Of a stretch of 64,000 nucleotides of DNA, positions 6,911 through 54,185 are shown in pieces; position 1 is the stretch's first letter, and each line of letters begins with the position of its first letter. Both the position numbers and the translations under genes were made by a program. This DNA comes from Mytilus edulis (lineage: Eukaryota). The notes beneath the pieces are model-generated. The model had not been told where the DNA came from, ran no database searches, and was given only the letters and a program-made list of their open reading frames with translations. The DNA lies in assembly GCF_963676685.1 (NCBI RefSeq), contig NC_092347.1:26970001-27034000 (forward strand), read 5' to 3'.

Positions 6911-7219
6911 ATCTAGCAAATGATATGTTGGAGTTTAAATGGACGTATGAATAGGTGTACATGAATATATAAGATATTATTTGAATTTATTTTCTCTGAT
7001 TAGAATATGCAAATAAACTCATCATATATCTGCTCTATCTGGCATTAAGTATTTGGTGGAACATTGTCTTACTCATAAGTATGAATTGCCCACATTTTCT
7101 TTTTTTTTTGCTAAAAAAAAACCAAAAAAACTGCCAGCAGAAGTTGAGGTAAACGTATACAAGAATATATTTTTTTCCTGGATTGCCTATAGTATATACA
7201 ATGATATTTTATGAATGTT

Positions 7220-9127: not shown

Positions 9128-9598
9128 GATCTGACTAGTGTGACCAGGGGATATCGAAGGTCTAGCTAGAAGTCAGTCAATTAAGATCTGACATACTTAG
9201 AAGTATTGTGACCATGGGGATATCAAATGCCCAATGAAATGTAGAGTTAGAGGAAGCCTTCAAGGTCTTGCTCATAGTCAGTCAGTATGGATCTGACTCA
9301 GTGTAGCCAGGGGATATCAAATGCCCGATGAAATGTCGATTGAGAGGAAGGTCTTGCTAGTAGTCAGTCAGAATGGATCTGACTTAGTGTGGCCAGGGGA
9401 TATCAAATGCCCGATGAAATGTCGATTGAGAGGAAGGTCTTGCTAGTAATCAGTCTAATAAGATCTGACGTAATGTGGTCAGGGGATATCAAATGCCCGA
9501 TGAAATGTCGAGTTAGAGGAAGGTCATGCTAGAAGTCAGTCAATTAAGATCTGACTTAGTGTGGTCAGGGATATCAATATCGACTGAGAGGAAGGTAG
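9128..9598. repeat. 86-bp tandem repeat, ~5.5 copies
   Basis: GATCTGAC anchors at 9290, 9376, 9462 and 9548, with degenerate copies upstream. Confidence 0.85.
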
Positions 9599-32800: not shown

Positions 32801-35800
32801 GGATTCATTTATTATCGTTGGTATCAGGGGTGGATCCAGGATTTTGGAAAGGAGGGGTGCAGTTTTTAAATTTGCCGACGTGAGCGAGGCGAAAAATTTT
32901 TGGGACATTTTTTTGGCTAAAAACATGAAATAAGTGTAATATGCATTTATGTTGTGTAGTTCCTGAAAAGTGTTAAGGGTTGGACATTTTCAATGCTGTA
33001 TTCTCCCTATATATATTAATTGCCTATCATAAAATGATAGTACGGATTTAAAGCTATTTACTGATAAATTTGATGTGGGACTTTTCAGTAAAAAAAGACA
33101 TGGAAAATTCTCGCTGGTTTGTTGTAAGTTAAGTTATCATAACCTCACAGATTTCTTGTTGTAAACAAGATATAAGTCGGGCTATTCGATGAAATTTACA
33201 ATACGACGGACACGAGCTAAAAAAGACAAGCAAGCAATATTTATCCAAATGTTTGGTTGATATGTTTCACCCAACAAAATTAAGGGATGTGATGGATTCC
33301 AAATCAACCAAAAGCTACGAATGAGTCTGAAATCATCAGACAACCAATATATGAATTAATGACGGTCGAAAAATGAAGACATAAAGGCTACTTTCAGCAG
33401 GCAGGTTACAGTCTGGTCTTGAAAAATGTATTCAATATATCAGTTCCGCGAAACAGACATTCCGGTCAGACATTCAAACCCCAGCCAAAAAGAATATACG
33501 CTCGTTTGTATTCATCATGTTCATTTAATGCTTAATAATTCTGTTGGATATTCGTTTCTAATAGCAAAAAAATGGACAAGATTATTGTTTTCAATCCAGA
33601 TACGGCCAGAATTTTTGTTTAATGCAAAAATCAATGTCAATTTTTAATCTCTCAAATATCTCAGACTGCCTCCTCAAATCAAATGTTTCGTTCCTTATAC
33701 TTTAAATCTATCTAGAGCTTATACCATGTATACTGACTGGGGAACATTATTCAGTTATAACATTATTTTAAAATAGGATGCCGATCATGGGGCGTTACGA
33801 GTAACAGTTTAACATGTTTTCGTAGGTATTTCTAAATAATATTGCTGGGGAATTTTTTTTCATGAGAGTGTACTAATATAGAGTATTAATGTTTGGCGGA
33901 CTAATGAAATAGAAGTCAATACATTCTTGCTCTATCCTGTGTCGCCTTGAAGGTGTTAAAATTGTCATGCTCAGCCTAAGCAATTTGTGACAGTAATTTA
34001 AATTTCAAAATGACTGAGAGACGTTTTTTCGATGCACTGGTCAATTCCACCTTAGTGAATTACATGACTTTCAGTTAGTATATACCAGCGAAAAATATCT
34101 TTATAAGTAAAGAATTGTCACATAAAATAAATACACAGGAAATGGGAAAGTTCACGTCGTCTAGTCTGATTAATCATTTTACAAAAAAAAAAAAAAAAAG
34201 TCCAAGCAAAGGGTATGCCCTCTATGCCCCCCTCTGGATCTGCCACTGGGTATTAATTTTAGTGGATTGCTGAAAACTTGCATATTCATGGATACTTGAT
34301 TTCGTGGTTTTGACAATCTCTTTATACAAAGCCTATTGAAAATATGTTATTCGGTGTATGTTTGAATTCGTGGTTCAACAAAACCTATTGAAAATATGTT
34401 ATTCGGTGTACGTTTGAATTTGTGGTTCAACTGTACACATGAAACCCAAGAAAAATTGGTATCCAATGAATAATAATGAATCCACAGTAATAAATTTCGT
34501 TTTTTATCACTGTATTCTGTGAGGAAAGAGGTAAGAGAGCATGTAAAAATATGGATTGTGAAATGTGCAAAGGTATTTCAAAACTTCAGTTTACAGTACT
34601 ATATATGTTTACTTAATACTTATATTAGCATGCTTAGGGTTAAGTTTACACATATATGTCACTATTATCCCTTGTTATATATCAACAGATTTTAAAGAGT
34701 GTACCTAGGATTTGGTTTATAACAGGTTTCCCTGTTGCATTGGGATCAGATTACATGTTACACAGGGTTTGGGCTATACAGGTTTTCATGGTAACCAAAG
34801 CCAGTGTTCAGTTGGTACAAGTTTTTAATGTTATTCAGGGTTTGGGCAATACTGGTTTCCATGTTACCCAGTGTTGGTAAATACATGTACATGTTTTCAT
34901 GTTATCCACAGTTCAGTGGATACTTGTTTACCCAGTGTTTGATATTAACACAGGTTTTCATGCTATCCACGGTTTTGGCAATACTGGTTTCCATGTTTAA
35001 GTTACCTGTAGAAAGTGTTCGTTTAATACAGCTTTTATGTTCCCAAGTGTTTGGTTTAATACAGCTTTTATGTTCCCAAGTGTTTGGTTTAAACAAGTTT
35101 TTATGTTATCCATGGTTTGGTTGATACAGAATTCCATGTTACCCAGTGTTGGTTAATACAGGTTTACAAATGTACAAATGACCCAGGGTTTGGTTAAAAC
35201 AGGTTTTCATATTATCTTTAGTTCATTTGTACTGGTTTCCATAATCACAATCATTCAGTTAGCATTCCATAACCTATATAAAAAATGTATAATACATTGA
35301 GAGAACTTTATTGAGCTCAAATTATACCCATAAGAGCATGAAAAGGGTCACATACTATAATTTTCATCAAATGCCCCATTTTCCTCAAATCCCTAGACCC
35401 TTAAGAAACATGTATTTACATGGACATTGGTTAGTTTGAATTTATTTGTTTAATTATAGTTAAGTACATTACATGTATGTTTCATTATAATACATTATTT
35501 TGATTGGTTTACCGTACAGCAATCTCACTTCATTCTGAAAGTACTGTGAATTCATTAATTTTCATGGGTACCAATTTTCGTAGATTGAAAAAAACTTGCA
35601 TTTTCATGGATATTTGGTTTCGTGGTTATGCTGACCTGTTCATACAAAGCCTTTAGAAATTTTTTGTAATTCGTTGAACATTTGAATTCGTGGTTCACAT
35701 GTATCCAGGAAATCCATGAAAATTGGTATCAAACGAATAATAATGAATGCACAGTAACCTTCATTTCCAAATAAATGTAACATTCATGATCATCATGATG

Positions 35801-37634
35801 ACAAGAGTTTCTATAATAAAGTGCAAAGGGATAAATGATAGAAAAACTTCATAGAAACCATGTTTTCATGATCCTATCAAAGAAATGTAATTGTAAATAT
35901 TGAATACTTCTTGAAGTAATTTTATAGAGTTTTAAAAGTTGACCCTGCGTGCATTTTTAGAATGAAGCGCTTCCGTGCTTCATACAAAATTCAATCTTAT
36001 TTGTTATTGAAGTAATATTTATCTTGTATGTTATTGTAGGCACCTATAGAAATGAGAGACGAATGGTGGGCACAGTTGTTAATGACTGGACATTCTTCAT
36101 CAAGACGGAAAAACTTGTTGCGTTTCTTTCAAAAAAAGGAAAATGCAAAGTTAGTAAGAGCAAAGAAGAAAGTGGAAAATGAGAAAAAGATGGAGATACA
36201 TGATGCAGAAAAAAAAATTATGATGGGAGATCTATTGTACAATCCAATTAAGAGAAATACTATTCATTTAAAGATCTTAAGACAAACCATGGTTCATCAA
36301 ACGGATTCTAAACTAGCACAATCTATGATATTTGGTAGACCATTCGTTGTTGATATGAGCTATGAACCATACATGGGAATTAAAGAGAAGAACAGTTGTG
36401 TAGATCAATTACTTAATGGTTATGGTGCCAATAGATCTAGAAATGAACCTAGTGATCTCATATTTACCAACTGGATTCATGATAGCTTTATCTTTAAAAA
36501 GCTCAACTTTATTCAAAAAGAGCGATCTGCTTACCCTACCTTAATGATGAAATGTACTGAACAGAATTATGTGGATCTATTCCCAAAGGAAAGACTGGTA
36601 TATCTGTCACCACACTCACCTTTTGAGTTAACACACGATGACCCAGACAACATCTACATAATGGGAGGATACGTTGACTTGGGTGGCGGCAAGCAAGGAC
36701 AAAAACCAGTATCCTATGCTAAAGCTAAGCAAGAAAAAATTAGAAGTTGCAGACTCCCCTTAGATAAATATTGTGTGTAAGTTTAAGTTTGTGTGAGTCA
36801 TTTAAGAACCTCAAACAGAAATTGTGTTACCATCCTTTTCTTGAATTTCTCTAATAGACTGTTGAATAAATGTGAATACAATCCAGGTAAACTCGTAAGA
36901 GAGTCACACTATCTCTTTTTGATAAACATGATAAAGAGCTACTGAACAAAACACAACTAAAATGAAATGTGATCAGTATTTTGCATGTGAGTTCATAATA
37001 TAATGAAATTGAGAATGGAAACGGGGAAAGTGTCTAAGAGACAAAAACCAGACCAAATAGAAGAAAACAGCCCAAGGCTACCAATGGGTCTTCCACACAG
37101 TAAGAAAATCCTGTACCTCAAAAGGCAGGTCTCAGCTGGCCCTTAAACAAAAATGTATACCATGTATACTGATTCACACTATCATAGAAAAAGGAAGTCA
37201 CACTAAAATCCAAAACATAAATGAACCAAAATGAAAAAAAACAAACTTGCATGACTTACAAGACTAAAATTGGCCGTATGTTCCTGATGCAAAAATGCAG
37301 GGGGATTTAACATGTTTTGTGAGATGTCAAATCCCCCCAAACCCATAGCCAATGTAGAACTTATGTATTTTTATGCTTATTTGTGATGGGGGAAAGGAGT
37401 TAAATGTAGAATTTATGTATTTATATGCTTATTTGTAGATGGGGTACAGGAGTAAAGTCCTTAACCTTGAACCAAGTGATGAATATAATGTATGAATTTA
37501 TTGATACAAAAGACTGGAGCAGAGCATTTGAGCATGTGCCACGCAGGAAGTTACAAAGAGATGCGGATTTACGGGAACATTTATACAAAAAGCAGCAGAA
37601 AATGAATCGTGTCAACAGACGTCAATTCTTATGA
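29830..37634 (+). CDS. TRMT10C: tRNA methyltransferase 10 homolog C / mitochondrial RNase P protein 1; exons 29830-30144, 36040-36776, 37439-37634 (415 aa)
   Basis: Phase-consistent GT-AG introns, 1248 nt total. SPOUT Trm10 motifs FGRPFVVDMSY, LFPKERLVYLSPHS, IYIMGGYVD, RLPLDKY, WGTGVKSLTLNQV, W..AFEHVPRRK. Arg-rich N-terminus. AATAAA at ~37785. Confidence 0.9.
30170..31458 (-). mobile_element. Internally deleted Tc1/mariner element in TRMT10C intron
   Basis: Perfect 26-bp TIR CACATGGAAAAAAGTATTGCAACACC and TA TSD. Transposase remnants GHHHSTISR, RTVR..L...GFRA.RP.RRPLLT.RH and WPDRSPALNHIEHIWD. The middle of the DDE core is missing. Confidence 0.9.
31530..32735 (+). mobile_element. Helentron-associated (HINE/DINE-1-like) element with internal tandem repeats
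   Basis: Subterminal IR TTTATTCGACTGTA / TGCGGTCGTATAAA, (CGT)n microsatellite, ~120-140-bp tandem units, short GC-rich 3' end, T-rich flanks. Confidence 0.7.
32797..34487. mobile_element. TA-flanked MITE (C.GTGGATTCATT termini) hosting a nested insertion; related copy at ~35544-35754
   Basis: TA-CAGTGGATTCATT ... AATGAATCCACAG-TA. Confidence 0.7.
32825..34248. mobile_element. 1.4-kb non-autonomous DNA transposon, 5-bp TSD GGTAT
   Basis: CAGGGGTGGATCCAG ... CTGGATCTGCCACTG, with GGTAT on both sides. Confidence 0.75.
34705..35245. repeat. Degenerate ~32-bp minisatellite
   Basis: Recurring GGTTTAATACAGGTTTTCATGTTACCCAGTGTT-like unit. Confidence 0.7.
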
Positions 37635-38227
37635 CCAGACATTATGCCAGATGTCCTCCGAGTATATGGATGATGAGACACAGAACAATAGTTGTATTAT
37701 TAGTGGTTTCTTATGACCATTATCAAAACTTCTTGTAAATACAATTTACATACTTGTTTACTGTTATCAAGTGTGAGTGTTAATAATAAAAACAAAGCAT
37801 GTATTAAATAGTATTACCAGTTTTTCTGACTAAATTTTTTATTATTTGATGAAGAGAAATAGGATAAACAATTATGAATGCACGTCAGACAACTATAATG
37901 ATAGATATCAGGCAAACTTTTTTGTAAGCCAGAAACACATTTTATCTACAAAAGACTCATCAGTGACACCGAATCAAAAACTTTTAAAACAAGAGCGTAA
38001 AGGAACAAAAATTTTAAAAGATTTTGCCAAACTCAGTTAAGGTAATCCAATCCTTGGGTAACTTGTATCAAAGGTAGAGTTATTATATTCCTTAAAAATT
38101 TAAATAAAACACTTATATTTCTTTCAGTTAATTAAAACCCTTTTTTCTATTTTCTTGAACATCTTTTTACTAGTCTGTGATTTTGGAAAGATTTGAAGAG
38201 GAGATGATGATAAGTACCCTAACTTAA

Positions 38228-38611
38228 GGAAGTTCACTGCTCAGTTTCAAAATAAATAGCTTACCATAACACAAGAATATATTGATAGGGGATAAATTGA
38301 GGAATCAAAAAAGCAAAATAAATAGGGGTCAATGTGCTTTTTTTGGATATAAGCAATTGGAATTTTGGCAAGCAAATATTCTCTCAATTTTTCATAGCTT
38401 TATCATTGACAAGTTTAAGTTCTCAAAAACTATTAAAAAATGAATAGGATTTTATAAGACTTTTACAAATGGCTTATAATTATACATGTAAAAGATTTAT
38501 AAAAAGAAAAATGGGGGTCCATGGGCAAATTTTTTTAAGGCATTCAAATGGATAAAACCAGAGGATTTCGCAAATCGGACAAAAATTCCAAAACATGACA
38601 AGCAAACATCC
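38228..38611. mobile_element. Degenerate TTAA-targeting MITE (Kolobok-like)
   Basis: TTAA-GGAAGTTCACT ... AGCAAACATCC-TTAG. Confidence 0.5.
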
Positions 38612-39299
38612 TTAGTTTTCTCGTTTCAATTGTTTTACATTGTCATATCAGGGCCTTTAATAGCTGACTAATGCGGTATGGGCTTTGCTTATTGTTGAAG
38701 CCGTACGGTAACCTATAGTTGTTAGTGTTATTTTGGATTCTTGTGGATCGTTGTTTCATTGGCAATCATAAAACATCTTTTTTATATTAAGTTTGAATAT
38801 TGGTTTTTTGTTTGGAATTTTTTTGACTGTTTTTTCCAATGGAAACAAAACGTTATTCAATTGGAGACATATGTACTGGACATGTGACTGAAAACAGTTT
38901 CCATGCAATACCTAATGAACTGTACATTTATTCTTTCAAATTTTAATAGGATTTTACTGATGACAAATCGGAAGTCAAGCTTGATATTGACTATTTTCAC
39001 TTGCATATAATGACATTTCAATGCAACACTTAACTGTTCAACCAACATGACCAATGCCTATAAATTTGAATGATGTAAATATTGAAAAAAAAATGGAGTT
39101 CCAAGTTCCAGAAGGGTTGGTCCCTGAGAGATTAGAATCTGGCACTCTTTTCCATTCAATAACTTATATACCATTTAACCCATGCCTTTCAAAATTTTTA
39201 TATATCGTTTCTGCAGAAAAAAAGGTGCAATCCCTAAAATGTTGTATCTGTAATATAAAGGTTTTACTACAGATTCAATAAACTAAACATTATAAATGT

Positions 39300-39880
39300 T
39301 TATGAAAATGAGGTCACAGTCAGATGAACCATACTAGACATTTTCACTTAAAAATCATTTCACACACCAGATATAGTGGTCCTATCCCTCATAGTACCTG
39401 AGAATCAGAAAGAACCACAAAATATCAACATTGACCAATGGATTATCACGAGGTCAAGAACGTATAAACCTTGCAAGACAGACATGTATAACTTACAATA
39501 ATTCTACACACAAAATGCAGTTGACCTATTATAGTATTTGATAAACTGACAAAACTTTGAAAATTTATCATGGACCAATAAACCATGAGAATAAGGTCAC
39601 TGTCCTATTAACACTGCCAGACAGACATGTTCACTTATCAATCATTACAGACACCAATTATAATTGACCTATTGCTTATGGTATCTTTAGAAAAAGACCA
39701 AACCACAAAACTGAACAAGTGTTCAATGAACCATGAAATTGAGGTTAAGATCTGATGAAACCTGCCAGTCAGACATGTACTTGACAATCATTCTATACAC
39801 CAAATATAGTTGACCTTATGCTTATAGTATCTGAGAAACAGACTTGAGTAAGTAACTTTAACCTTGATCACTGACATACA
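39300..39880. repeat. Degenerate ~150-bp satellite-like array (related pieces at ~40530-40730 and 41300-41520)
   Basis: Recurring GAGGTCA..CCAGACAGACATGTA..ACAATCATT..CACCAAATATAGTTGACC. Confidence 0.65.
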
Positions 39881-40734
39881 GCACAGTAAAAATGACATAG
39901 TTCAACTATCTCCCAATAGAGCAAATACTAATAAAAACCAAGACCCTGACTACATGCACACCTCCAATATGTGCAAACAGCTTGACCATTTTGTCTACAA
40001 AAAACTCGTCTGTGACACTGAATAAAACATGTTTACACATAATGGGACTGACAGACTAAAACAACAGGGCTGCAAAACCAAAAAAACTGAAATGTTTTTC
40101 AAGCAGTTGCTGAATCCTGATATAAATATTTGGATTATATTGAATACAAATATCACTCTGTGCTTGAGATAATGATAATCATAAACTAAGAGAAAATAAA
40201 AGCATATTTTAAATATTTTATTTAAAGAATTAATATCATTTATCATGTTCATTGAATTTCATTTCTTAAAAAGAATTTAACGAAGGAAATTTCTTCAATA
40301 AAATATGAATAATACATCAACATTACATATGAATGTACCTATTTACAAAATATTTAAAGGCATTTGAAAAGCAGGAAAGGATACCGCAAGACAAATCTTT
40401 ATATGTAAAATATATGGTAAGAAATACATGTTTCACTTAACAAAGGAAGAGTACACATGATGAAATGTCTCACCTGCTTTATTGATTATACTTGACTTTA
40501 TGTTGCGAGTTTTTAAGAGAAAAGAGTTTACCTTGTATTACCCAAACTTAACATAATCAATGAACTCTGTAAATAAGGTCAAGGTCAAATGCACCCTACC
40601 AGACAAATTTGTACACTAACAATCATCCCGTACATCAAATATATTATATTGAGAAACTAACATAACCGTGAAAACTTAACATTTACCAATGAACCATCAA
40701 ACTGAGGTCATAGTCGCATGAAACTGACATTTAA

Positions 40735-41290
40735 GGAGGCTTGCAGGTATAAGATTTTCAGAAAAAAATTAAACTTTAATTTTTCATTACAAATTTTATT
40801 TATTACCTTTAGTAGTTGTTACTTTATCATATGGTACAAAAGTGATTCCAAAAAATCAGTTCGTGTTGGCCCCAGGTGACTTTTGAAATGTAGATATCAC
40901 AGAAAAAGCTCCAAATTATCGCCCTTTGGTGCAAAAATGCCATAATTGGCATTAAAATCTCTTTTTTAACTCATCGGTGACCTATATTTTTTATTGTTGT
41001 TTTCAAATAAGCTGTACATAAACTAAATAATTGTAAAATTTAAGCGATTTCTGTAATTAAGTTCTTTTTTTATTTCAATATTACCGTTATTTTTCCTATT
41101 AGTTCAACAGAAAAAAAAGGACAATAACAAAAGTGTATGCATTTTTAAATGGAAGATTGTTAGCGTAAATGAACGGTGACCCCATTTTTTAATTTCATTT
41201 TTCTTTTAAGTATAAGATAAAGTTCATTTATAGAAAAATATGGAGAAATCCTATATTAAATAAAAAAATAGATTTAGACCCGCGAGCCCC
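40735..41290. mobile_element. TTAA-flanked MITE (Kolobok-like)
   Basis: TTAA-GGAGGCTTGCAGGT ... ACCCGCGAGCCCC-TTAA. Internal CGGTGACC motifs are shared with 49007-49604. Confidence 0.7.
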
Positions 41291-41772
41291 TTAATTCTTT
41301 TAATCATTCCATACACCAAATATGATTAACATACTTCTCATAATAACTAAAAAATGCATGCAACAATGATAACCTTACATTGACCATGGCCTTGAACTAT
41401 TGAGTTGATGTGTGAAATAAAAAAAACTTAATGTTAATCACTGTTCCAGAAAATGATGTCAAGGTCAGGTGAACCCTACATAAACGTAAGTATTCAATAA
41501 ACAAAATGAAGTACTGTAGTCCTTTTTCTCATATTATGTTTTATTTATTGCATAATTTGCCATAGTTTATGACAGTTTTCTGAAAGTTTAAGTTGCACTG
41601 ACCCTTCACCACAAACATTTTTTCTGAAATATTCTTTATATATTAAATTCTTAACTTTTGGACCAACATTTCAATTGGAGAAGGGTTGCTTCACCTATCA
41701 AATGATGACAAAGGTAAAAAAATTATACTTACAAAATTAAAACACTAAGCAATACATATACACAAGATTTAC

Positions 41773-41925
41773 CAGTGGCGGATCCAGGGGGGGGGGGGGG
41801 GGGTTCCAGTTTTTTTTTTTTTGGCTGATCAATGCATTTGAATGGGAGCATAAAGTTGGAACCCCCCCCCCCCTTTTACTCTGGGTTGGGAACCCCCCTT
41901 TTTAAAATGGCTGGATCCGCGCCTG
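41773..41925. mobile_element. MITE, 5-bp TSD TTTAC
   Basis: CAGTGGCGGATCCAG ... CTGGATCCGCGCCTG, flanked by TTTAC. Confidence 0.85.
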
Positions 41926-42643
41926 TTTACTCAAATAATTGATGTTTAAAACATACACTGCTCCTTTGAGAATATCTGGTCAATGTATTCAAGATGTCTG
42001 TTTTAAAATTTATATTGAGAAATAAAGGGCTGCTTTGCCTAAATATGTATAACCTTTTTGACAACAACAAAAACAAAACAATTTGAGGTTACAAGAAAAT
42101 GTGTAGCAAACACACTTTAATAGTTAAATACAACTTCTGTCTTAAATAAAAACATATGTATTATGTGTTTGAACACATAACATCCAACTACATTTAGAAA
42201 TGTGTATTGCATGACAGTAAAGATCAGTTAAGATCATCATGTTTTTACTTATGACCATCTAACTTATTTCCCCTTTTACTAGATGAAACACTACAAATGA
42301 AAGATGTACCTTTATGTATTTGACGGTACATTTATATTACATTTTTTCACAAAGTAGATATAAGAAGATGTTGTATGAGTGCCAATGAGACAACTCTACA
42401 CGTATTCTCAATCCAAATCTCAATTGGTAAAAGTATGCCATATTATAGGTCAAAGTTCAGTCTTCAACACAGAGCCTTCAGTCTTCAACACAGAGCCATA
42501 GACATGTACACACATTTGTTCTTTATATATCATACTGCACATATTTCTTTGTTTACTGAATACATTATGGCAAATGCTTGTAGTGAAATATTCTCTACTG
42601 AATGAATCTTTTGACAAAGTAACATTATCTAAACATATATAAA

Positions 42644-45600
42644 TTATATTTGTACACATGACCCACTTTTTAACATTGTTACACATGATGCATGTATTGG
42701 ACTTGTGGGATAAATTTTGATAGGCAAGTCCCACACCATTGTTTCTACATTAATAGTAGCAGGTCCTCTCCAGCTGGCTGAATCATCCATATTTGTAGGT
42801 CTTTCTGATTCAGATATTGGATCACTTGAAGTCACGAACTCAAAATGTAGTCTCCATCTCAAACAAACTGTAAATATTAACAATAAATGTTACATTTTAT
42901 TTATCTAAGTAGGATTCAGTAGGATAAATTCCAAAAATTCTATCTGTTAATTGTCTCCCCTTTTGCATTTTTATAAAGAAATACAAATAAATCTTATCAT
43001 TCTTCGCTTGTTCAAAAATAACAGAACATTTTTGGTATTTATATCATTTGATACAGTGTATTGATGTGTTTTGGTCTATCATTTCAGCCGGCATATCTTT
43101 GTATTTGTTAGAGCAGGGAACAATGATGTGCTTGAATTATTTATATTAGTTTTAAAAGTTTCATTCCTAAATCTATTATAAAGCATTGGGTAGCTGTATT
43201 TAATTTGATATTGGTGTATTAATATGAGTATTTGTTAGTTCTAACCTATATCTGTTATGAAGCATGGAGTAGCTGTGAGTGGTATTGGTATATTGACATG
43301 AGTTTTAGCTGTATGAAGACACATTTCCTGATGTTTGACATAAGACGTCACAGCTGTTCCTTGACCAGGCTTCTTTCTACATTCTTCTGAGATTTGCTCC
43401 TCACTTTGTAATGTTACAGAATACTGAAAAATTAAAGTAGAAAATATTTGAGCCTTTCAAGATATTTGTTGTCATCAAAAAGTACATGCAGAAACATGAA
43501 TGTGTCCATAGTACTGATGACCAACTCACACTATCATTTTCTATGTTCAGTGGACTGGGAAATTGGGGTCAAAACTCTAATTTGGCATTAAAATTAGAAA
43601 GATCATACTGTAGGGAACAGGTGTTCTAAGTTTCAAGCTGATTGGATTTCAAAACTACATTGATCAAAAACTTTAACCTGAAGTAACAGACAAATCTATA
43701 GACTAAAAACATAATGCCCCTAGGTGGGACATTAATGTGTAGGAAACCCCCTAAATTAAATAAAACAAGAATGTGTCCACAGTACACGGATGCCCCACTC
43801 CCACTATCATTTTCTATGTTTAGTGGACCGTGAAATTGGAATAAATTCTCTAATTTGGCATTAAAATTAGAATGATCTTATCAAAGGGAACATGTATACT
43901 AAGTTTCAAGTTGATTGGACTTCTACTTTATCAAAAACTACCTTGACCAAAAACTTTAACCTGAAATTTGCACTATCATTTTCTATGTTCAGTGAACCGT
44001 AAAATTGGGGTCAAAACTATAATTTGGCATTTAAATTAGAAAGATCATATCATAGGGCACATGTATACTAAGTTTCAAGTTGATTGGACTTCAACTTTAT
44101 CAAAAACTACCTTGACCAAAAACTTTAACCTGAAATTTGCACTATCATTTTCTATGTTCAGTGAACCGTAAAATTGGGGTCAAAACTATAATTTGGCATT
44201 TAAATTAGAAAGATCATATCATAGGGCACATGCATACTAAGTTTCAAGTTGATTGGACTTCAACTTCATCAAAAACTACCTTGACCAAAAACTTTAACCT
44301 GAAGCGGGACAGACGGACGAACGAACGAACAGACGGACGGACGAACGGACACACAGACCAGAAAACATAATGCCCTCTACTATCGTAGGTGGGGCATAAA
44401 AATGATTAAAAATTAAAATAACAGGAGAAGATTTTGATGGAAGAACATCATGTTAAAATTAACATAAAAATTAAAAGTTGTCATTTTGTGGCAGTTAATA
44501 ATATCATGGAATAGATTTTCCATTTGAATAAAAGAAGATATGAGCCATACAGCACAAGACAGCAAACCAACAGAGAAAAAACACCTTTTAAAGACGATGA
44601 CAGATCAACATATGTTTTTTTTTTGTACAGGGGGCACACTGGCTTATTGCAAAGCATATAAAAAGACATGTTTCACTTGTGAACATATCTTTTTTCTGGC
44701 TAACTAATCTTAAAAGTGAACAGGATAAAAATAGTTTATACTTTATATAATAGTGATCAATAGCCTGATATGATCTGGGGACATTTAATAATTATGAATA
44801 AGAGTGACAGTTGTATGCATGGCAAATAGGATTTAGTTACTGGTGACCAAATATCACAATTTCTTACAAAAACTCATCCATGATTCAAAGTTTATAATTT
44901 GTATTTGGTATGCCAGATGCAAGTTTTTTTTTTAGAAAATATCCAATCTTGATCAATTTTCATAACATTTGACCAAATCTAAGGATTTCATTTCTTCCAT
45001 TTATATTTTGATTCTGTCATACTGGGACAGATTTAATTGTTTGTAGATCTTTATTTTCTACCAACCTGGACACATGGTATTGTTCCATCTGTGAAGTTGA
45101 ACACACCTACAATGTCTTCACCTAATTTATAGGCTTGCTTAAAAAGTATAAACTTAGCTACTTTTCCTTTGGCATTTGTAATATTGTATGAATCTGAAAT
45201 GAAAAAAGTTTGTTTTATTTTATTGCTTATGTATTTACATTGTATCATAGATCAAATTTATTCATTCAGTGTAATGCCACTTGTGTTAATATGCATATGT
45301 CTTTTGATTGAGTTAAGCCATTTTAATTGATTTTTTATAGTGTGTCTTTCTATGTTGGGATGTTACACTATTTTTCAGATAAGGGTGAAGGTTGGTACCT
45401 ATTAAAATGTTTAAACCCTAAGCCTTAGTCAGGAATCCTATGTACAGTAGTTGTTGTTTGTTGATCTGGTTCAAAAGTGTTTCTTGTTTCTTGTTTCTCA
45501 AATAGGTTCAACCATTGGTTTTCCCATTTGAATGGTTGTACACTAGTCATTTTTGGGGCCCTTCATAGCTTGCTGTTTAGTGTGAGCCAAGACCGTGATG

Positions 45601-48600
45601 AAGGCGTACTTTGACCTATAATGGTTTACTTGTATAAATTGTAACTTGGATTGAGAGTTGTCTCATTGGCACTAATACCACATCTTCTTATATCTATTAT
45701 ATAAAGAAAACATGTCCTTAAAATCTTGTTAAATATTAATAAAAACTTATTAAATGAAAACATGTCATTTAGTCTCTTGTGGAGAGTTGTCTCATTGGAA
45801 ATCATACCACATCTACTTATGCTTAAATGTTAAATGTTAGTATTGCTGTGTTTCTTTTCCATTTGCTTGAGGTATAGGGGGAAGGCTTAGATCTTACAAA
45901 ACATGTTTTTACCCTACCATAGTTTTATAACCTAAATTACATGATTACACATAGTATTTAATTTTTTTTGGTTCATCTATGAAATAATAATAATATGTGA
46001 ACTAAATATAAATATACAGTAAACTTTGCGTCTATCTATGGTAAACAAAAAATATGTCTGGTGTACAAAACTTTAAGTCTGGTAACTTTGATGAGTTCAT
46101 TTTCACTGACCAAATGACAAACTTATTCCAAACCAAGGTGTGATAATGAATTAAGTCTGTACAATATCATGATCAGAAATATTCTACACTTGTTGCCTAC
46201 CAAATTAAAGCTGCCCAGACTAGGCCAACTAAAATTAATTAGTAGATTTTCATCCAAATTTTTGAAAAAAATGGGGCGGGTGGGAGGATTTTATTTTTTA
46301 AATTTTATTTCATATGAAACCTTCTGGTCACGGTTTATTCATATATGCAAGTGTAATAATAAGCTTATATCATGTAAATACATCCATAAGGTGTCTTGTA
46401 TAAGACAGTAACAATCAAAACCAAGGAGTAACCAAAGACTCATAAAACCAAAAGACATTTACATCAACAGTTACAAATAATAGGTAGGAATTAACACGAA
46501 CTCCACTAAAAACCAGGAGTGAAATCAGGTGCTCCGGAAGGGTAAGCATTTCCTGCACCATATACGGCTCCTGTCATGTTATTTCTTTGTTCAGTTCGGT
46601 AATGATGGAAGGTTATTATGACTGAGGAAGAATATCACTGAGATATGATTTCTGACACACTTTTGTCATAATGGCCAATCAGCTCATGATGACGACCATA
46701 AAATTGCTTGAGTGATGACTTTAATTAGATTGATTCATAGCCCTGTCTTATCAACTTTTGAGAAAGCAGTATTTCTCGTTCAACAAATCAATGTACTTTG
46801 AGCTAGCTCTAGAGTAACGTATCAATTGAAACACATATACTCCATATGCTGGTGCCGCTTTTTCAAATTCGTAAATATATATCTCTGATTGGCAATCACT
46901 GTTACTCATGTAATTGCTGCTTTAGATACCTATTTTATAGTAAACAGCAGAAATGAGGAGAAATGCTCTCTTCATTTGGACTACCTCCATCAAATGTATT
47001 TTGCTTTCTAAGCAATGTTTTGTTGTCCTAATAAAATGAAGCAAATGCATTGGTATGCAACACGAGTACGATAAGTACAGAATAAAATGAAAACTTAAAC
47101 AGTGTTGAAATAATAGGGTTGGTCCTTAGTATGCAAGATGCAAATATAATTACAATGTAAAACATAAAGTTGTTTAATGACTCTATCGTCAGTATTGTGA
47201 CAGAGGATGTTTGCTGTTTTTCTACAAAAAACGAAAGGCATGGCTAAATCTTAATCTAAGAGCTTGCTATAAATTAATAAATAAAAAATGCGTATGTTTG
47301 TCGATTTTCTGAACTCAATATACCGTCACCAATCTAAAAAGTTCATGCTTGTGTCAATTTCTTTATTCCAGTCAAATGTGTTCCACGATTCTTACGCTTT
47401 TGGGTTTCATTCACAGTTCAAATTTCTTGACACAAAGTCATTGTATAAATAAAATAAATCCAAGGTGTTTTAGGGAGCTACCATTTGATTTTTATGGGGG
47501 GGCTAGGATGAAATTTTTTTAGCTGTAATCTCTGTCCTGCCTTTTTATTTTTCACTCTGTTCGGTCCTGCATATTTTTTTTTTTAGTTTATCCAGACTTT
47601 TTTTTACCTCAATTGTCGTCCTGACTTTTTTTTATAGCAAGTGTCTCATCCTGCCTTTTTTTTTTTACTCAAAACTCCTGTCCTGCCTATATTTTTTAAA
47701 TTTCATCCTAGCCCCCCCCCCCATAAAAATCAAATGGTAGCTCCCTTATTCACAAACATTTATGTCATTTGTGACATACGGCGATTTGCGTTTTTGGACA
47801 CAGCATATTACTCGTAACCCGAATATTTCATGCCCTTCTCGTAATCAATCTCTATTCTCGGTAAATGATGTTATCATCATAGATCAGAATATATCGACTT
47901 AATGATTTTAGTAAGAATACTCTGAGAAATACGAAAAACCGTATTTTAAAACAGGAAGTTTTACATGAAGGGAAATTATCAACGGTTACCGGTAACGGAA
48001 ATGAACAAAATCCGGAAATCAAAATTTTTTCAAAAATAAAAAAAATCGGGGCGGGAAGATTTCAGAGGGGCGGGCGGGGATGAAAATCTATCAATTAATT
48101 TTAATTGGCCCTATAAGTTAACATACACTTTTCACAACGACCTTCAACTTCAAGCTGCTGTTGTTTTGTTTTTCCTTTCAGTAGACACTAAATGTTGATC
48201 AAACTTACGTGGTGCTTTTCTTGCTGTAACTGTTGATAAAACCTGCATGGCAATATCTAGTAGCGAGTTCTCTGACTGCTGAGGTTTAAGGAATGGATTT
48301 GAGGGTGATACCTCTTCTCCCTCTGTGTACACACTTATATCATTTAAACCTGAATCATACAAGATAACATGATATACTCCCTCTGTGTACACACTTATAT
48401 CATTTAAACCTGAATCATACAAGATAACATGATATACTCCCTCTGTGTACACACTTATATAATTTAAACCTGAATCATACAAGATAACATGATATACTCC
48501 CTCTGTGTACACACTTATATCATTTAAACCTGAATCATACAAGATAACATGATATACTCCCCCTGTATACACACTTATATCATTTAAACCTGAATCATAC

Positions 48601-51600
48601 AAGATAACATGATATACTCCTTTGTGTACACACTTATATCATTTAAACCTGAATCATACAAGATAACATGATATACTCCCTCTGTGTACACACTTATATC
48701 ATTTAAACCTGAATCATACAAGATAACATGATATACTCCCTCTGTGTACACACTTATATCATTTAAACCTGAATCATACAAGATAACATGATATACTCCC
48801 TCTGTGTACACACTTATATCATTTAAACCTGAATCATACAAGATAACATGATATACTCCCTCTGTGTACACGCTTATATCATTTAAACCTGAATCATACA
48901 AGACAACATGATATACTCCCTCTGTGTACACACTTATATAATTTAAACCTGAATCATACAAGATAACATGATATACTCCCTCTGTGTACACACTTATATC
49001 ATTTAAGGTGGTATGGGTGTCTTCCTCCATCTTGGATTGTAAAAAACAGAGAATCAAAGGTCCAGATTTTCCATCAAGTTAGCAAAATTTGATGCAGGAA
49101 TGCAAATGTTTAATGTACATTTTCATTTAAAAGTACCAATTTATAAGAATATAACTTCTAAATAATGATATTTTTGCAAATGTTAATTATTTTTGGTTGT
49201 TTTTTTGTTGTTTTTTTTTTAAATTGGCATTTTAAGGGGAGGTAACTCTAAAAAAGTGCATTTTCTGAAGGATTCTGTATGGAATTTTCCTATTTTGTAT
49301 TTTAGCCGGAAAAAACGTACGGTGACCCTATCTTTTCTTTTGATATTCTCAAAGCAGTGTCTGAAAGCTATCTTTTCCTGAAGTATTTAACAATTCTATT
49401 ATTTTGTTTAGTTTCTAATCACAAAATGGGGTTTTTACCTGTATAATCCATACAAAATGTGTCATTTTGTCCCGTCCTGTAGCTTGAGAAAATGCGCAGT
49501 GACCTATCATTTTTATTATATTTTTCAACATGTATCAATAGATACAACGTTTTGACAAAGTATGAACAAATTCTATCATTTTTATTTTAGACTCCCATAC
49601 CACCTTAAACCTAAATTATACAAGATAACATGATATACTCCCTCTGTGTACACACTTATATCATTTAAACCTGAATCATACAAGATAACATGATATACTC
49701 CCTCTGTGTACACACTTATATAATTTAAACCTAAATCATACAACATAACATTATATACTCCCTCTGTGTACACACTTATATCATTTAAACCTGAATCATA
49801 CAAGATAACATGATATACTCCCTCTGTGTACACACTTATATCATTTAAACCTAAATCATACAAAATAACATGATATTATGTCAACATCTCTAACTAGACA
49901 TCATTGAGATGGGAGTCATTCAGCTTGGCCCTAACTATCATGTATAATAAATGCTTTGATAATTTTATGATTTTAATTTCAAGGCAAATTGTACTAACAC
50001 ATTTCTTTAACACAAGAGAGTTGTAGGTCTTTTCTATTATGTTTTACCCTTATCTTTGTCTGCTTTGAACATATACAATACAACTCACTAATATCCTCTG
50101 TTGTTATACAACACAGTGAATCTATTTATTCTAAACCATTGTGTTCTTATTCATCTTATTCACTTTCTATGCGCTGCCTTCAAAAAGAATTGTAATTTGC
50201 TAATACATGTACTGTATTGCAAATGCAGAAGATCCAATCCAATAAGGAAAAATCTTGAAAATATCTGTTGGGGTAAATTTGATCTTTCAAAAAAGGTAAA
50301 AAATAGAAAAACAGAAAATGCAAATATCAAACCTCATGAAAATAATCAATTTAGTATAAATTTGTGTTTTCTTTACCGTGTAATACCATAACTCTAAATG
50401 GCATTCTGATAAGTTTTGTTGGCTGATTAAATTTCTGTGCACCAATTGTAACTTTGTAAGAATACTTCACCGCCTGGCCTTTATAGGAAGGTGGAGAGTC
50501 CACAGGTATTACATCTTCATATATAACTAAAAATAAATGAAACATTATTTATAAATCTGTCCTTTATCAGGAAGATCAATAGTCTACAGGTATCACATCT
50601 TCATATATAACTAAAAAATAAAATGAAACATTATTTATAAATCTGTCCTTTATCAGGAAGATCAAGAGTCTACAGTATCACATCTTCATATATAACTAAA
50701 AAATAAAATGAAACATTATTTAAAAGCCAGTTTTTTATATTACAGACAGGTGGACTTGTCAGGTATCACATCTTCATAAGTTCATATACTGTAATAGCGA
50801 CATTATAAATAAGTAAGAGTTATCTATCCTTACATTGAATGTTGCTGTGTGCTTATCTTTAAGAGAATCTATGTAATGAATATGTGCAAGACCTGATGTG
50901 TTTGATTAAAGATGGTACCATCAATGGTATTAAGCATTTGTATATGCCTTTGGTTTAATCTAGTAAACTCGTCCAATAGCGACATTACATATACAATTTA
51001 TAAACAAAACATAATATCTTTTACAACCTCTCCCGTTATGCAAACAGAGTCTAGGTTTCTGAGATGAACAGTAGAGTTTTGCTCTTTTGAAGATGACTAA
51101 CAAAATTGAAAGAATCTTAACTAATCATTGATTTATTGGATGATATCAGCATAAATAGACATTGTATGCCTACTGTAAGGATGCAGTCTTATTTACATAT
51201 AATCTCCTGATCAATTTTACTGGAAGAGTCAAAATCTTTATTTAATAATAGTTTTGTAATCAGCAATATACTGATTTTCTGCATTTTCATCAAATATTTG
51301 TATACATATATATATACATATTTAGGCAAATGTTTTTATGTTGTGATGTTACACTATTGTTTCAGATAAGGGTGACGGTTAGAACCTACTAAAATGTTTA
51401 AACCCGCTGCATTTGTTTGCACCTGTTCTTATATGTCTTAGTGAAGAATCTGATGTTTAGTAGTTGTCTTTTGTTGATGAGGTTCATAAGTTTTCTCGTT
51501 TCTCATATAGATTAGACCCTTGGTTTTCCGTTTGAATGGTTTTACTCTAGTCATTTTTGGAGCCCTTTATAGCTTGCTGTTTGGTGTAAGCCAAGGCTCC

Positions 51601-54185
51601 GTGTTGAAGACAGTACTTTGACCTATAAAGGGTTACTTTTACAAATTGTGATTTGGATGGAGAGTTGTCTCATTGGCACTCATACCACATCTTCTTATAT
51701 CTAAAAATATCACATAAGAAATCAAATTGTATAAATTTGTATGTAGTATTGCTGCTTTATCTTACATGACTTTGATTCTCCAGCTACAAGTTTCAGATCA
51801 CAGAACAATATCCTGGGCTTTGTTGATAAAACTGTTAGTCCACGTTCACCTATAAAACATACAGAATGTAGACAACCCTAACATGCATGTACATATATAT
51901 ACCAGTAACAAAACAGATGATTTAAATTGGGTTTATCATTTTTATTTACTAAGGTCAAATGATCTGAGTGGCTACCAGATCAATTAATTAAACCTTTGTA
52001 CTAATGTTATGATGGTCAAGTGGTGTGAGTGTCTGCCTAAATATATCATTGTTATGATGGTCAAGTGGTGTGAGTGTGTGCCTAAATATATCATTTCAAC
52101 CTAGTATAACAGTCTCGCATTAAGCCCTTTTTAGCCCACTTGTGACAATATAATTTCACAATTTTCAAATTTACTTGATGTAGTTAGATATAAAAGATCC
52201 CACTTTTAAATTTTTGCGATGATTTATATTCATGATATTCACATTATTTATCTACTTGCAAAAGTTGTGGAAATAAATTGCTTGCAAAAAATTAGTTGAT
52301 TTACAGAATATCTGAAGCAGGAATTTCAAAAAATCATTTGGAAAAATAACAATGTGCACTTTACTAACTGTTGTTTTTGGCAGGAAAAGGTTTTTGTTTT
52401 ACATAGGTAACTTTGGTATTTGTCTCTTAAAAAACATTGATCATCACATGTTTAAATGTCTATAAAACTGTGAATTACAATGTATGTTAAATTTATGTTT
52501 AAATTTAATAAACAGTTAACACCGAGATACATCTCATGGACGTAAATCTCTGTGTAAATAAGAAATGCCAATGTTAAGTAGTAAAGTTGTATATCAAATA
52601 TCATTGACTTACCATAAGTAGTTACCATTATACTGACCTAATCACCAACTTCAGCTGCTACAAATTCCAAGTCCCTACTTTGCAACTTTGTCAAGGAAAG
52701 ACAAAAATTATACTTACATAAAGTTATGTATAGTTTACCTTTATTGGGTACAAAAGATGTGTCACACCCAGTAGTTGACACTTCTTCTGTTGACAGTTGC
52801 TGTGACTTAGGAAGGTGCACCCTTGATTCACTCACAGAACACTGACATATTATCTGTACACTAGACCAGGCTAGACTATCTGTATCACTATAAATAAACA
52901 CATAATATCTGTACACTAGACCATGTTAGACTATCTGTATCACTATAAATAAACACATAATATATGTACACTAGACCAGGTTAGACTATCTGTATCACTA
53001 TAAATAAACACATAATATCTGTACACTAGACCATGTTAGACTATCTGTATCACTATAAATAAACACATAATATCTGTACACTAGACCATGTTAGACTATC
53101 TGTATCACTATAAATAAACACATAATATCTGTACACTAGACCATGTTAGACTATCTGTATCACTATAAATAAACACATAATATCTGTACACTAGACCACG
53201 TTAGACTATCGGTATCACTATAAATAAACACATAATATCTGTACACTAGACCACGTTAGACTATCTGTATCACTATAAATAAACACATAATATCTGTACA
53301 CTAGACCACGTTAGACTAACAGTATCACTAATTCACTATGAATAAACACAAAATATTGTATGGGTGTTGCCTATGCATTGTACAAGGGTATTCAACAAAA
53401 TCTATAAAAATGTAATTTTATTTATGTGCAAACAATATGTTTCCAGAAATTATTGCCTTTTTTCATGAATGGATAAACTTGCAAGTTTTATAATTGCCGT
53501 TACATTAAAATATGAATAAAGATCTATGTATCAGTTTTCAAAATGCAAGTTTTTACTGTGAAACTCACCCTGTCGCATTTTTCACATTAATGTCAAAAAT
53601 TTTGGATCAACAAGAGTGAATAATGATCTCCCCTTGTAAAGCATTGAGGGGAATGAACTTAGATACCAATACACCTGTACACAGCTTGTAATCATGGTAA
53701 TGGTATATTTGCAATAGTTGAGAGTGTGGCACTATCATATTATGGGTTATGAACAACATCAGTAGACCATTGTAAGGGTTATCAAACTTGGTTTTAAATG
53801 TAAATCAATATTAATGAATACATTTAACAATGAAAATATATATAGTTATAATTAATAATTAGATTTGGTGGTTTGGTGCATGTGTTAATAAAAAAGTATT
53901 GAAGGTAAATTAACAACTAAAAATATTATAATTAATAATCTAATGTAAATAAAGGCAACAGTGGTATACTGCTGTTCGAAATTCATAAATTCATTAAGAG
54001 AAAACATATCCAGGTTACAAACTAAAACCTGTAAAACTTATAAATCATCTATAAGAGAACATATATAATATATATACTACAAACCTTGGATTTTGTGAGG
54101 TGTTACTGAAGGTAATCTGACTTTTGACAGTTTCACCAGCTAGGTATACAGACCCTCTTGGCAAACAGGCTGATACTTCTATCAT
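42644..54185 (-). CDS. RGP1: RAB6A-GEF complex partner protein 2; exons 54185-54085, 52887-52739, 51849-51766, 50526-50377, 48349-48209, 45193-45066, 43423-43246, 42867-42644 (384 aa)
   Basis: All introns are GT-AG and phase-consistent, 1155 nt total. [99 protein letters not shown] matches metazoan RGP1 as recalled. Confidence 0.95.
43490..44402 (-). mobile_element. Two adjacent HINE/pearl-like elements with ~170-bp satellite units (43490-43735; 43763-44402); fragment also at ~22240-22385
   Basis: GATGCCCCAC / GTGGGGCATAAAA subterminal IR, (GACG/GAAC)n microsatellite, and one and three tandem units respectively. Confidence 0.75.
46405..46860 (-). mobile_element. Penelope-like RT C-terminus/3' fragment
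   Basis: [17 protein letters not shown] remnant followed by a conserved non-coding tail. Confidence 0.6.
47473..47745. mobile_element. Harbinger-like MITE, TSD TTA
   Basis: Long TIR GGGAGCTACCATTTGATTTTTATGGGGGGGCTAGGATGAAATTT. Confidence 0.85.
48318..49876 (-). repeat. 60-bp tandem array (16 units) spanning the RGP1 exon 5 acceptor
   Basis: Unit = 28 nt of intron end + ~32 nt of exon start. Interrupted by a MITE. Confidence 0.95.
49007..49604. mobile_element. TTAA-flanked MITE (Kolobok-like) inserted in the 60-bp array
   Basis: TIR GGTGGTATGGG(T/A)GTCT (15/16). TTAA duplicated at 49003-49006 and 49605-49608. Confidence 0.9.
50478..50780 (-). repeat. ~84-bp tandem triplication spanning the RGP1 exon 4 acceptor
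   Basis: TTTTTAG|TTATATATGAAGATG occurs with the AG at 50527, 50611 and 50696. Confidence 0.9.
52849..53352 (-). repeat. 55-bp tandem array (9 units) spanning the RGP1 exon 2 acceptor
   Basis: TTATGTGTTTATTTATAG|TGATACAGATAGTCTA.. repeated every 55 bp. Confidence 0.95.

What the first reader, a model, noticed from the sequence alone, without database searches (positions are those of the whole stretch)
37351..53352. Recurrent tandem amplification of intron-exon junctions in two housekeeping genes
Seen: five unrelated tandem duplications each straddle a splice junction and extend only into the intron. They lie at the RGP1 acceptors of exon 2 (55 bp x9), exon 4 (~84 bp x3) and exon 5 (60 bp x16), the RGP1 exon 7 donor side (x2, decayed), and the TRMT10C last-exon acceptor (x2). 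Young arrays keep the AG in every copy, while the two old decayed copies have lost AG or GT. Inference: either a mutational process focused on splice junctions, or a selection filter plus strict exon definition that lets the spliceosome ignore up to 15 near-identical decoy acceptors. I do not know of a description of this as a general system, but I cannot search the literature.
Basis: partly seen in the sequence, partly recalled or inferred. Interest (0 to 1): 0.82.

Follow-up and report, generated by a model that had tools for sequence, protein, structure and literature searches.

The report
Splice-junction minisatellites in mussel RGP1
Two neighbouring mussel housekeeping genes carry five short tandem duplications made of their own exon edge plus splice site. 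This kind of repeat is already known from amphioxus as a "mirage" minisatellite, and here the copy next to the exon is the one spliced in the assembled RNA.

Summary
RGP1 (minus strand) has locus-specific tandem arrays at three acceptors:
- Exon 2: 55 bp x9.
- Exon 4: 85 bp x3, plus a decayed fourth copy.
- Exon 5: 60 bp x15-16, split by a MITE.

Each unit is the intron's 3' end plus the exon's first 33-53 nt. A decayed x2 copy covers the exon-7 donor. A x2 copy covers the last acceptor of the TRMT10C-like gene.

RNA contigs from two studies and the Mytilus protein models use the exon-proximal acceptor. The decoys are not fully silent in annotation. The 60-bp unit is in frame, and two M. galloprovincialis annotations carry a 404-aa isoform with exactly one extra 20-aa unit.

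The kind is already described: amphioxus "mirages" (PMC3087553, PMC3902484) and the human F7 intron-7 VNTR (PMC1557585). I found no paper on it in molluscs. This scan has noted it before on other pieces of this same genome (15 notes).

Most likely these are ordinary slippage or unequal-exchange duplications. They survive because one intact junction stays attached to the exon body.

The local excess over a filter-only null is 4 seen against 0.24 expected (P about 1e-4). The locus was picked after the fact, and the P value is about 0.1 after correcting for the windows read. The genome-wide test could not be run.

The parts
52845..53350 (-). 55-bp junction minisatellite of nine copies. Eight are decoys and the ninth is the real intron-1/exon-2 acceptor (AG at 52889-52888, exon 2 = 52887-52739). 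The unit is 14 nt of intron end (tgtttatttatag) plus 41 nt of exon start ([13 protein letters not shown]).
   Evidence: TRF. Sequence and copy list. RNA contigs join at 52889/52887. Unique in the genome. The decoys form one homogenised group (CTAAC[A/G/C]TGG, GATATTA) that is distinct from the real copy (CTAGCCTGG, GATAATA).
50474..50806 (-). 85/86-bp junction repeat at the exon-4 acceptor: two decoys, the real copy, and a decayed fourth, most distal copy (50806-50760). Exon 4 = 50526-50377. The unit is about 31 nt of intron plus about 53 nt of exon ([17 protein letters not shown]).
   Evidence: RNA contig piece 50375-50526. Unique in the genome. The decoy exon parts contain stop codons and are out of frame (85 nt).
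48317..49006 (-). Proximal block of the 60-bp junction minisatellite at the exon-5 acceptor, 11 copies including the real one (ttcag|GTTTAAATG, exon 5 = 48349-48209). The unit is 27 nt of intron plus 33 nt of exon ([11 protein letters not shown]). It is in frame and open for the four decoys nearest the exon. The fifth decoy has a 1-nt deletion.
   Evidence: RNA contig piece 48209-48347. Unique in the genome.
49605..49876 (-). Distal block of the same 60-bp array (4-5 copies, 94%), cut off from the proximal block by a transposon insertion.
49007..49604 (.). MITE of about 598 bp inserted into one unit of the 60-bp array. Terminal inverted repeats GGTGGTATGGG(T/A)GTC, TTAA target-site duplication (piggyBac-like). 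It shows that the array predates the insertion.
   Evidence: Sequence. DNA contig depth of 1e4-2e5 in two other organisms.
43148..43294 (-). Decayed x2 duplication of the exon-7 end plus donor. The real junction is atatag|gttagaact (last exon base 43246). The copy about 70 nt downstream reads atttag|gaatgaaact, so GT has become GA.
   Evidence: local alignment score 26 over about 70 nt. Probe score 21 against 8-14 at the eleven junctions without a duplicate.
37351..37453 (+). 52-bp x2 duplication of the last acceptor of the TRMT10C-like gene. The real site is ttatttgtag|ATGGGGTACAGG (exon starts at 37439). The upstream copy reads ttatttgt-gATGGGGGAAAGG, so its AG is lost.
   Evidence: The tRNA_m1G_MT domain lies in the preceding exon. 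That exon's donor is TGTGT|gtaagt at about 36773.
42644..54185 (-). RGP1 (RAB6A-GEF complex partner 2) gene, 8 coding exons: E1 54185-54085, E2 52887-52739, E3 51849-51766, E4 50526-50377, E5 48349-48209, E6 45193-45066, E7 43423-43246, E8 42867-42644. Ten of its 14 junctions carry no duplication.
   Evidence: The M. edulis protein XP_071171536 (P0366) matches, including the KLVAGESKS variant.
52005..52095 (.). Purely intronic 45-bp x2 duplication, about 155 nt upstream of exon 3. This is a non-junction array in the same gene, used as a local control.

Best explanation
These are "mirage"-type junction minisatellites: ordinary local tandem duplications that happened to span a splice junction and then expanded.

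The steps, marked shown or inferred:
- Origin (inferred). Each array began as one duplication of 50-90 bp, by replication slippage or unequal exchange between short direct repeats.
- Tolerance (shown for the outcome, inferred for the cause). Such a duplication leaves one complete copy of "intron end, splice site, exon start" joined to the rest of the exon. The normal mRNA can therefore still be made.
- Site choice (shown). Assembled RNA uses the exon-proximal copy.
- Why that copy (inferred). The real acceptor is the one closest to the exon body and its donor, as expected under exon definition. Use of the 55- or 85-nt decoys would shift the frame and should be removed by nonsense-mediated decay.
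- Expansion (inferred from variant patterns). The extra copies then expand and homogenise among themselves like any minisatellite.
- Decay (shown). Older copies lose their AG or GT.

The 60-bp array is in frame. Use of its nearest decoys would add 20 aa per unit, and in M. galloprovincialis this form is annotated as an isoform.
For: - The units are made of the gene's own junctions and occur nowhere else in the 1.37-Gb genome.
- RNA contigs from a PacBio run and an Illumina run, from different studies, join exons 2-3-4-5 at the last copy of each array.
- All 384-aa Mytilus proteins agree with this, including those also found on Logan transcript-sized contigs.
- In the 55-bp array the decoys share variants that the real copy lacks. 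The most distal copy of the 85-bp array is the most decayed. Amphioxus BflGb6 shows the same pattern of interior homogenisation with the boundary copies excluded.
- A high-copy MITE with a TTAA duplication sits inside the 60-bp array, so this is real, aged sequence.
- The 404-aa M. galloprovincialis isoforms from two assemblies carry exactly one extra unit. That unit is identical to what the penultimate acceptor in this window would give.
- Published precedents report the same anatomy with undisturbed splicing.
Against: - Four TRF-detected junction arrays on 16 junctions compare with 0.24 expected from the density of non-junction arrays (18 in 127.6 kb).
- Four of the six arrays in the transcribed 18 kb are junction arrays, against about 6% expected by my own arithmetic.
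- A plain filter does not predict this clustering.
- Contigs cannot show rare isoforms, so the silence of the decoys is not proven.
- Copy-number variation, which is a hallmark of minisatellites, could not be checked.
Confidence: 0.68

Rival explanations
1. Splice junctions are mutational hot spots for short tandem duplications in this genome. Possible causes are transcription- or splicing-coupled DNA damage, R-loops or fork stalling at exon/intron boundaries of genes expressed in the germ line. On this reading the arrays are over-produced at junctions, not merely tolerated there.
For: - The local excess is 4 seen against 0.24 expected (Poisson P about 1e-4).
- Five of 16 junctions have a duplicate, against 8-11% of random probes.
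- An M. coruscus model (P0363) carries a separate 27-nt duplication that ends at the last base of exon 7. This is the junction that bears an older, decayed duplicate in this window.
- Earlier notes of this scan report many such arrays in the same genome. Those notes are unchecked.
Against: - The locus was chosen because it looks like this. After correcting for about 800 windows read in this genome, P is about 0.1.
- The same null gives about 1.5% of junctions a straddling array. That means thousands genome-wide, so their frequency alone is expected.
- The unit boundaries show only ordinary short direct repeats.
- No test was possible on an unbiased exon sample.
Confidence: 0.2
2. The arrays are kept because they do something. 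They might act as decoy acceptors that tune splicing speed or NMD-coupled expression, or as a source of alternative protein forms through the in-frame 20-aa units of exon 5.
For: - The 404-aa isoform is annotated in two M. galloprovincialis assemblies.
- The four decoys nearest exon 5 are open and in frame.
- All decoys of the 55-bp array carry TCTAAC, a branch-point consensus, 38 nt before the next AG.
Against: - No RNA contig and no Logan-derived protein shows a decoy in use.
- The older copies decay and lose their AG or GT as neutral sequence would.
- Unit lengths of 55, 85, 52 and about 70 nt are out of frame.
- The inserted peptide (VYHVILYDS) is translated intron, not conserved sequence.
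Confidence: 0.08
3. The arrays are assembly artefacts or pieces of a dispersed repeat or transposon that landed next to exons.
For: The arrays are 92-97% identical, and such arrays are hard to assemble. DNA contigs of other organisms break at the array edges.
Against: - The units are the gene's own coding sequence and have no other copy in the genome.
- The copies differ by ordered variants.
- A MITE is inserted in one array.
- Two independent M. galloprovincialis assemblies encode at least two units.
- DNA contigs of organisms B and D lie across the 55- and 85-bp arrays.
Confidence: 0.03

Closest known systems
Amphioxus "mirage" minisatellites (Adh3, Canestro et al. 2002; globins BflGb6 and BflGb9, PMC3087553; PGBD5, PMC3902484; also RDH, presenilin and troponin C)
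   Same: - Tandem repeats whose unit spans an intron/exon boundary, at acceptors or donors.
- Many copies keep AG or GT.
- The mRNA is spliced normally.
- Interior copies are homogenised and boundary copies are not.
- The units are locus-specific.
   Different: - The host is a bivalve mollusc, not a cephalochordate. I found no publication for molluscs.
- The units here are shorter than in the globins (52-86 bp against 150-160 bp).
- Up to 15 decoys, with four arrays in one gene.
- Length polymorphism, which is shown in amphioxus, could not be tested here.
Human F7 intron-7 37-bp VNTR (PMC1557585)
   Same: The first unit of a minisatellite spans an exon/intron boundary. Identical pseudo-sites follow the real site and stay silent. 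The exon-proximal site wins.
   Different: F7 repeats a donor, and the choice was shown by mutagenesis to follow 5'-to-3' scanning. Four of the five cases here repeat acceptors. For those, the used site is the last one transcribed, so a simple first-come rule cannot explain the choice.
Intron gain by tandem duplication of an AGGT-containing segment (Rogers model; Hellsten et al. 2011, PMC3265369)
   Same: A short genomic tandem duplication creates duplicated splice signals, and the spliceosome resolves them without harm to the mRNA.
   Different: That model duplicates exonic sequence and creates a new intron. Here an existing junction is duplicated, and the extra copies simply lengthen an existing intron.
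Disease-causing junction duplications in human genes (for example FGG exon 8-intron 8, PMC9052919)
   Same: A tandem duplication of an exon/intron junction.
   Different: Those cases disrupt expression. They show that the filter is real and that not every junction duplication is tolerated. I saw only the title and abstract of this paper.

Membership tests
Mirage (splice-junction) minisatellite | The repeat unit contains the exon edge, the splice signal and the intron edge of the host gene. | tested here: met
   for the sequence. Exon limits come from RNA contigs and protein alignment.
Mirage (splice-junction) minisatellite | One terminal copy is the authentic junction used in the mRNA, and regular splicing is kept. 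| tested here: met
   RNA contigs of runs X19 and X17 join at the last copy for exons 2, 4 and 5. The 384-aa proteins of five Mytilus species agree. Rare isoforms cannot be seen in contigs.
Mirage (splice-junction) minisatellite | The unit is locus-specific and not a dispersed repeat. | tested here: met
   Whole-genome DNA searches return only the array itself.
Mirage (splice-junction) minisatellite | Length instability: copy number differs between haplotypes or individuals. | not testable with these tools
The only hint is that the M. galloprovincialis decoy units differ in sequence (TEG against RER).
Mirage (splice-junction) minisatellite | Concerted evolution of the interior copies, with the boundary copies left out. 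| tested here: met
   The decoys of the 55-bp array share three variants that the real copy lacks. The distal copy of the 85-bp array is the most diverged. In the 60-bp array the real copy equals the consensus, so the pattern is not visible there.
Recursive (ratchet) splice sites | An AG|GT site where the regenerated 5' splice site is strong enough to be used in a second step. | tested here: not met
   The exon-5 units read cag|GTTTAAAT. After joining to exon 4 (CACG) the donor would be G|GTTTAA, which misses the GTRAGT consensus at +3 to +5. This was judged by eye, with no scoring model.
Dispersed satellite or transposon-borne tandem repeat | The same unit occurs at many loci. | tested here: not met

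The most novel reading that the evidence does not exclude
Mussel genomes may make or keep short tandem duplications preferentially at exon/intron boundaries, so that junctions act as hot spots. In-frame arrays such as the 60-bp RGP1 repeat could then feed new coding repeats into proteins through use of decoy acceptors, as the annotated +20-aa M. galloprovincialis isoform suggests.
Probability: 0.2. Interest if true: 0.6.

Novelty: new member of a known kind. Interest (0 to 1): 0.36.

Why it matters
If the arrays are only tolerated passengers, the locus is a tidy natural experiment in splice-site choice. Up to 15 acceptors, many identical to the real one over the whole 60-nt unit, sit upstream of it, yet assembled RNA shows the last one. 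This is the acceptor-side counterpart of the F7 donor model.

If junctions prove to be enriched genome-wide, that would point to a mutational or retention bias tied to gene structure. It would also offer a route for intron growth, intron gain and exon extension in a genome rich in minisatellites.

For annotation, such arrays produce spurious or minor isoforms. Examples are the 404-aa M. galloprovincialis and 393-aa M. coruscus models, which are worth flagging.

Tried and rejected
1. **Genome-wide enrichment test.** I drew about 165 exon-like hits from whole-genome searches with PF00069, PF00063 and PF00067. I did not try to get those letters another way.
3. **Pattern scan of metagenome contigs** for the junction between the last unit and the exon: no match.
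4. **First word search** with representative P0014. This turned out to be a louse protein and returned mostly arthropods. A second search with the scallop protein reached Mytilus.
5. **The large representative search**. I used it only to get from a 79-aa exon to full-length relatives, because exon pieces are too short for the word search's length window.
6. **Dispersed repeat or transposon origin:** rejected.
7. **Recursive splicing at the AG|GT of the exon-5 units:** rejected, because the donor is weak.
8. **Other arrays in the window:** 9207-9577 near the NHL gene, and 34326-34431 and 35013-35165 upstream of the TRMT10C-like gene. None shows an adjoining exon.
9. **DNA contigs of other organisms.** They could not give copy numbers, because the repeats are skipped or collapsed.
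10. **Joined models.** Searches went exon by exon by reference, or by database protein ids. The only joining was an in-sandbox translation across the exon 4/5 joint to read frames.
Full report
**What is there**

The window is AT-rich (30-35% GC) and lies at G000:C4:26970001-27034000 of a 1.37-Gb genome. Pfam finds Rgp1 on two minus-strand exon pieces. It finds a tRNA m1G methyltransferase domain on a plus-strand ORF at 36052-36780.

The encoded RGP1 matches M. edulis XP_071171536 (P0366). It shares the private variant KLVAGESKS with that protein, so this is a blue-mussel genome.

- 55 bp x8.8 at 52845-53330.
- 85 bp x2.9 at 50474-50722.
- 60 bp x11.5 at 48317-49006, plus x4.5 at 49605-49876.
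- 52 bp x2 at 37351-37453.

**Exon limits and unit anatomy**

Transcript contigs from two RNA runs of different studies were laid on 47900-53400. X19 is PacBio and X17 is Illumina. They join 52737-52889, then an 82-nt piece, then 50375-50526, then 48209-48347.

After allowing for 2-nt alignment ambiguities, and reading the sequence, the exons are:
- E1 54185-54085
- E2 52887-52739
- E3 51849-51766
- E4 50526-50377
- E5 48349-48209
- E6 45193-45066
- E7 43423-43246
- E8 42867-42644

Each array unit is therefore the 3' end of the intron plus the start of the exon:
- Exon 2: 14 + 41 nt.
- Exon 4: about 31 + 53 nt.
- Exon 5: 27 + 33 nt.
- TRMT10C-like last exon: 35 + 17 nt.

The exon-5 acceptor is ttcag|GTTTAAATG.

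The exon-7 donor has a decayed second copy about 70 nt downstream. The pair is 43294-43227 against 43220-43148, and GT has become GA in the copy. The upstream TRMT10C copy has lost its AG. A fourth, decayed copy extends the exon-4 array to 50806.

**Which copy is used**

In all three large arrays the RNA contigs use the copy next to the exon body. The same holds for the 384-aa RGP1 proteins of M. edulis, M. galloprovincialis, M. trossulus, M. californianus and M. coruscus. Several of these also occur on transcript-sized Logan contigs.

Contigs drop rare forms, so this shows the main product and does not prove that the decoys are silent.

In the 60-bp array, many decoys match the real copy over the whole 60-nt unit (27 nt of intron, 33 nt of exon). 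The choice must therefore depend on sequence further downstream, meaning the exon body and its donor at +141. This fits exon definition favouring the acceptor nearest the downstream donor. That step is inference.

Use of a 55- or 85-nt decoy would shift the frame and should be removed by NMD. This is also inference.

**The decoys are not wholly ignored**

The 60-bp unit is 20 codons long. The four decoys nearest the exon are open in the exon's frame, and the fifth has a 1-nt deletion.

Two M. galloprovincialis annotations from different assemblies hold 404-aa forms: XP_076102503-6 "isoform X1" and VDI38200.1. Each has exactly one extra unit inserted before [14 protein letters not shown]. In VDI38200.1 the insert is [20 protein letters not shown]. 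This is letter for letter what the penultimate acceptor in this window would give.

No Logan-derived protein shows this form, so its abundance is unknown.

An M. coruscus model of 393 aa (CAC5376689) repeats ATPCFITDI at the exon 7/8 joint. That fits a 27-nt in-frame duplication ending at the last base of exon 7. It would be a second, separate event at the junction that carries the old donor duplicate here. I could not see the DNA, so this rests on the protein model alone.

**Origin**

Whole-genome searches with three-unit probes of each large array return only the array itself. These are local duplications and not a dispersed repeat.

In the 55-bp array the eight decoys share variants that the real copy lacks: CTAAC.TGG against CTAGCCTGG, and GATATTA against GATAATA. 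So one junction duplication was followed by amplification among the decoys. In the 85-bp array the most distal copy is the most decayed.

A MITE of about 598 bp splits the 60-bp array. It has GGTGGTATGGG inverted ends and a TTAA duplication, and very high depth in DNA of two other organisms. This argues against an assembly artefact and shows the array is older than that insertion.

**Is it known?**

Yes. A note of this scan on another piece of the same genome led me to the term "mirage", which I then checked in the papers.

[quoted passage not shown] It reports that AG/GT is kept in many units, that splicing is normal, that haplotypes differ in length, and that the boundary copies are excluded from homogenisation. 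It calls the mechanism unclear. It cites Adh3 (Canestro 2002), RDH and presenilin.

PMC3902484 adds PGBD5 and troponin C. PMC1557585 analyses the human F7 intron-7 VNTR. Its first unit spans the exon/intron boundary, and its identical pseudo-donors stay silent.

The Canestro 2002 paper is not held in the library. Searches for the phenomenon in bivalves found nothing. The scan itself has 15 notes of this kind in this genome. Those notes are unchecked AI notes, and I do not count them as evidence.

**More than chance?**

Within the window, 5 of 16 mapped junctions have a local duplicate. About 11% of random 50-nt probes have one, or about 8% without the junction arrays themselves. This null is conservative because it is based on coverage.

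A stricter null uses array ends. There are 18 non-junction arrays with period 30-300 in 127.6 kb (the window plus 17 other loci), and their periods sum to 1914. That gives about 1.5% per junction, or 0.24 expected for 16 junctions. TRF detects 4, for a Poisson P of about 1e-4.

Conditioning on arrays inside the transcribed 18 kb, 4 of 6 are junction arrays against about 6% expected. By my own arithmetic on the and 64 lists, P is about 2e-4.

Two cautions apply.
- The locus was picked because it looks like this. With about 800 windows of this genome read, the corrected P is about 0.1.
- The same null predicts that about 1.5% of all junctions carry such an array. That is thousands per genome, so frequent sightings are expected without any special process.

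The clustering of four or five arrays in two adjacent genes is the only feature the filter-only model does not explain. A proper test needs an unbiased exon sample.

**Verdict**

The best reading (about 0.68) is that these are junction minisatellites of the known "mirage" kind. They are born by ordinary tandem duplication and tolerated because the exon-proximal junction stays functional. They then expand and decay as near-neutral intron sequence.

A junction-directed mutational or retention bias remains possible (about 0.2), and a function for the decoys is unlikely (about 0.08).

The case is a new member of a known kind, in a phylum where I found no published report. It adds acceptor-side evidence and an annotated in-frame decoy isoform.

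Noticed in passing
window 49007-49604: A MITE of about 598 bp with inverted ends GGTGGTATGGG(T/A)GTC and a TTAA target duplication (piggyBac-like). It is very high-copy in DNA of two other organisms and is inserted inside one unit of the 60-bp array.
   Followed up: partly
window 51212-51763: Another extremely high-copy element in RGP1 intron 3. Summed contig depth reaches 9e5-4e6, with many joints and loose ends at 51653-51704.
   Followed up: no
window 52902-53350 (minus strand): All eight decoys of the 55-bp array read TCTAAC, a branch-point consensus, 38 nt before the next AG. The real exon reads TCTAGCC there (an Ala codon). The last decoy may now supply the branch point of the real exon-2 acceptor.
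   Followed up: no
P0363 (M. coruscus CAC5376689), equivalent to window ~43246-43272: This protein model repeats ATPCFITDI at the end of exon 7. That implies a 27-nt in-frame duplication ending at the exon's last base, separate from the decayed donor duplicate in this window. The 384-aa model on the same contig lacks it, so it may be allelic.
   Followed up: partly
P0359 and P0365 (M. galloprovincialis): These 404-aa RGP1 isoforms contain translated intron (VYHVILYDS) from one extra 60-bp unit. They may be minor or spurious isoforms and are worth flagging in annotation.
   Followed up: partly
window 4790-8320 (minus strand): An NHL-repeat gene, possibly TRIM-NHL-like, on ORFs 4790-5479 and 7220-7690. 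The 86-bp x3.7 array at 9207-9577 upstream of it shows no adjoining exon.
   Followed up: partly
window 34700-35250: A degenerate 33-nt repeat field (ggtttccatgttacccagtgtttgg...) upstream of the TRMT10C-like gene. It is open in one frame for 106 aa but has no family match.
   Followed up: partly
L026-L040 (G000:C3:19.69 Mb and C1:44.21 Mb): Intronless kinase-domain ORFs repeated head to tail every 1.77-1.87 kb. There are at least 10 near-identical copies on C1 and at least 4 on C3, so these are large tandem gene arrays.
   Followed up: no
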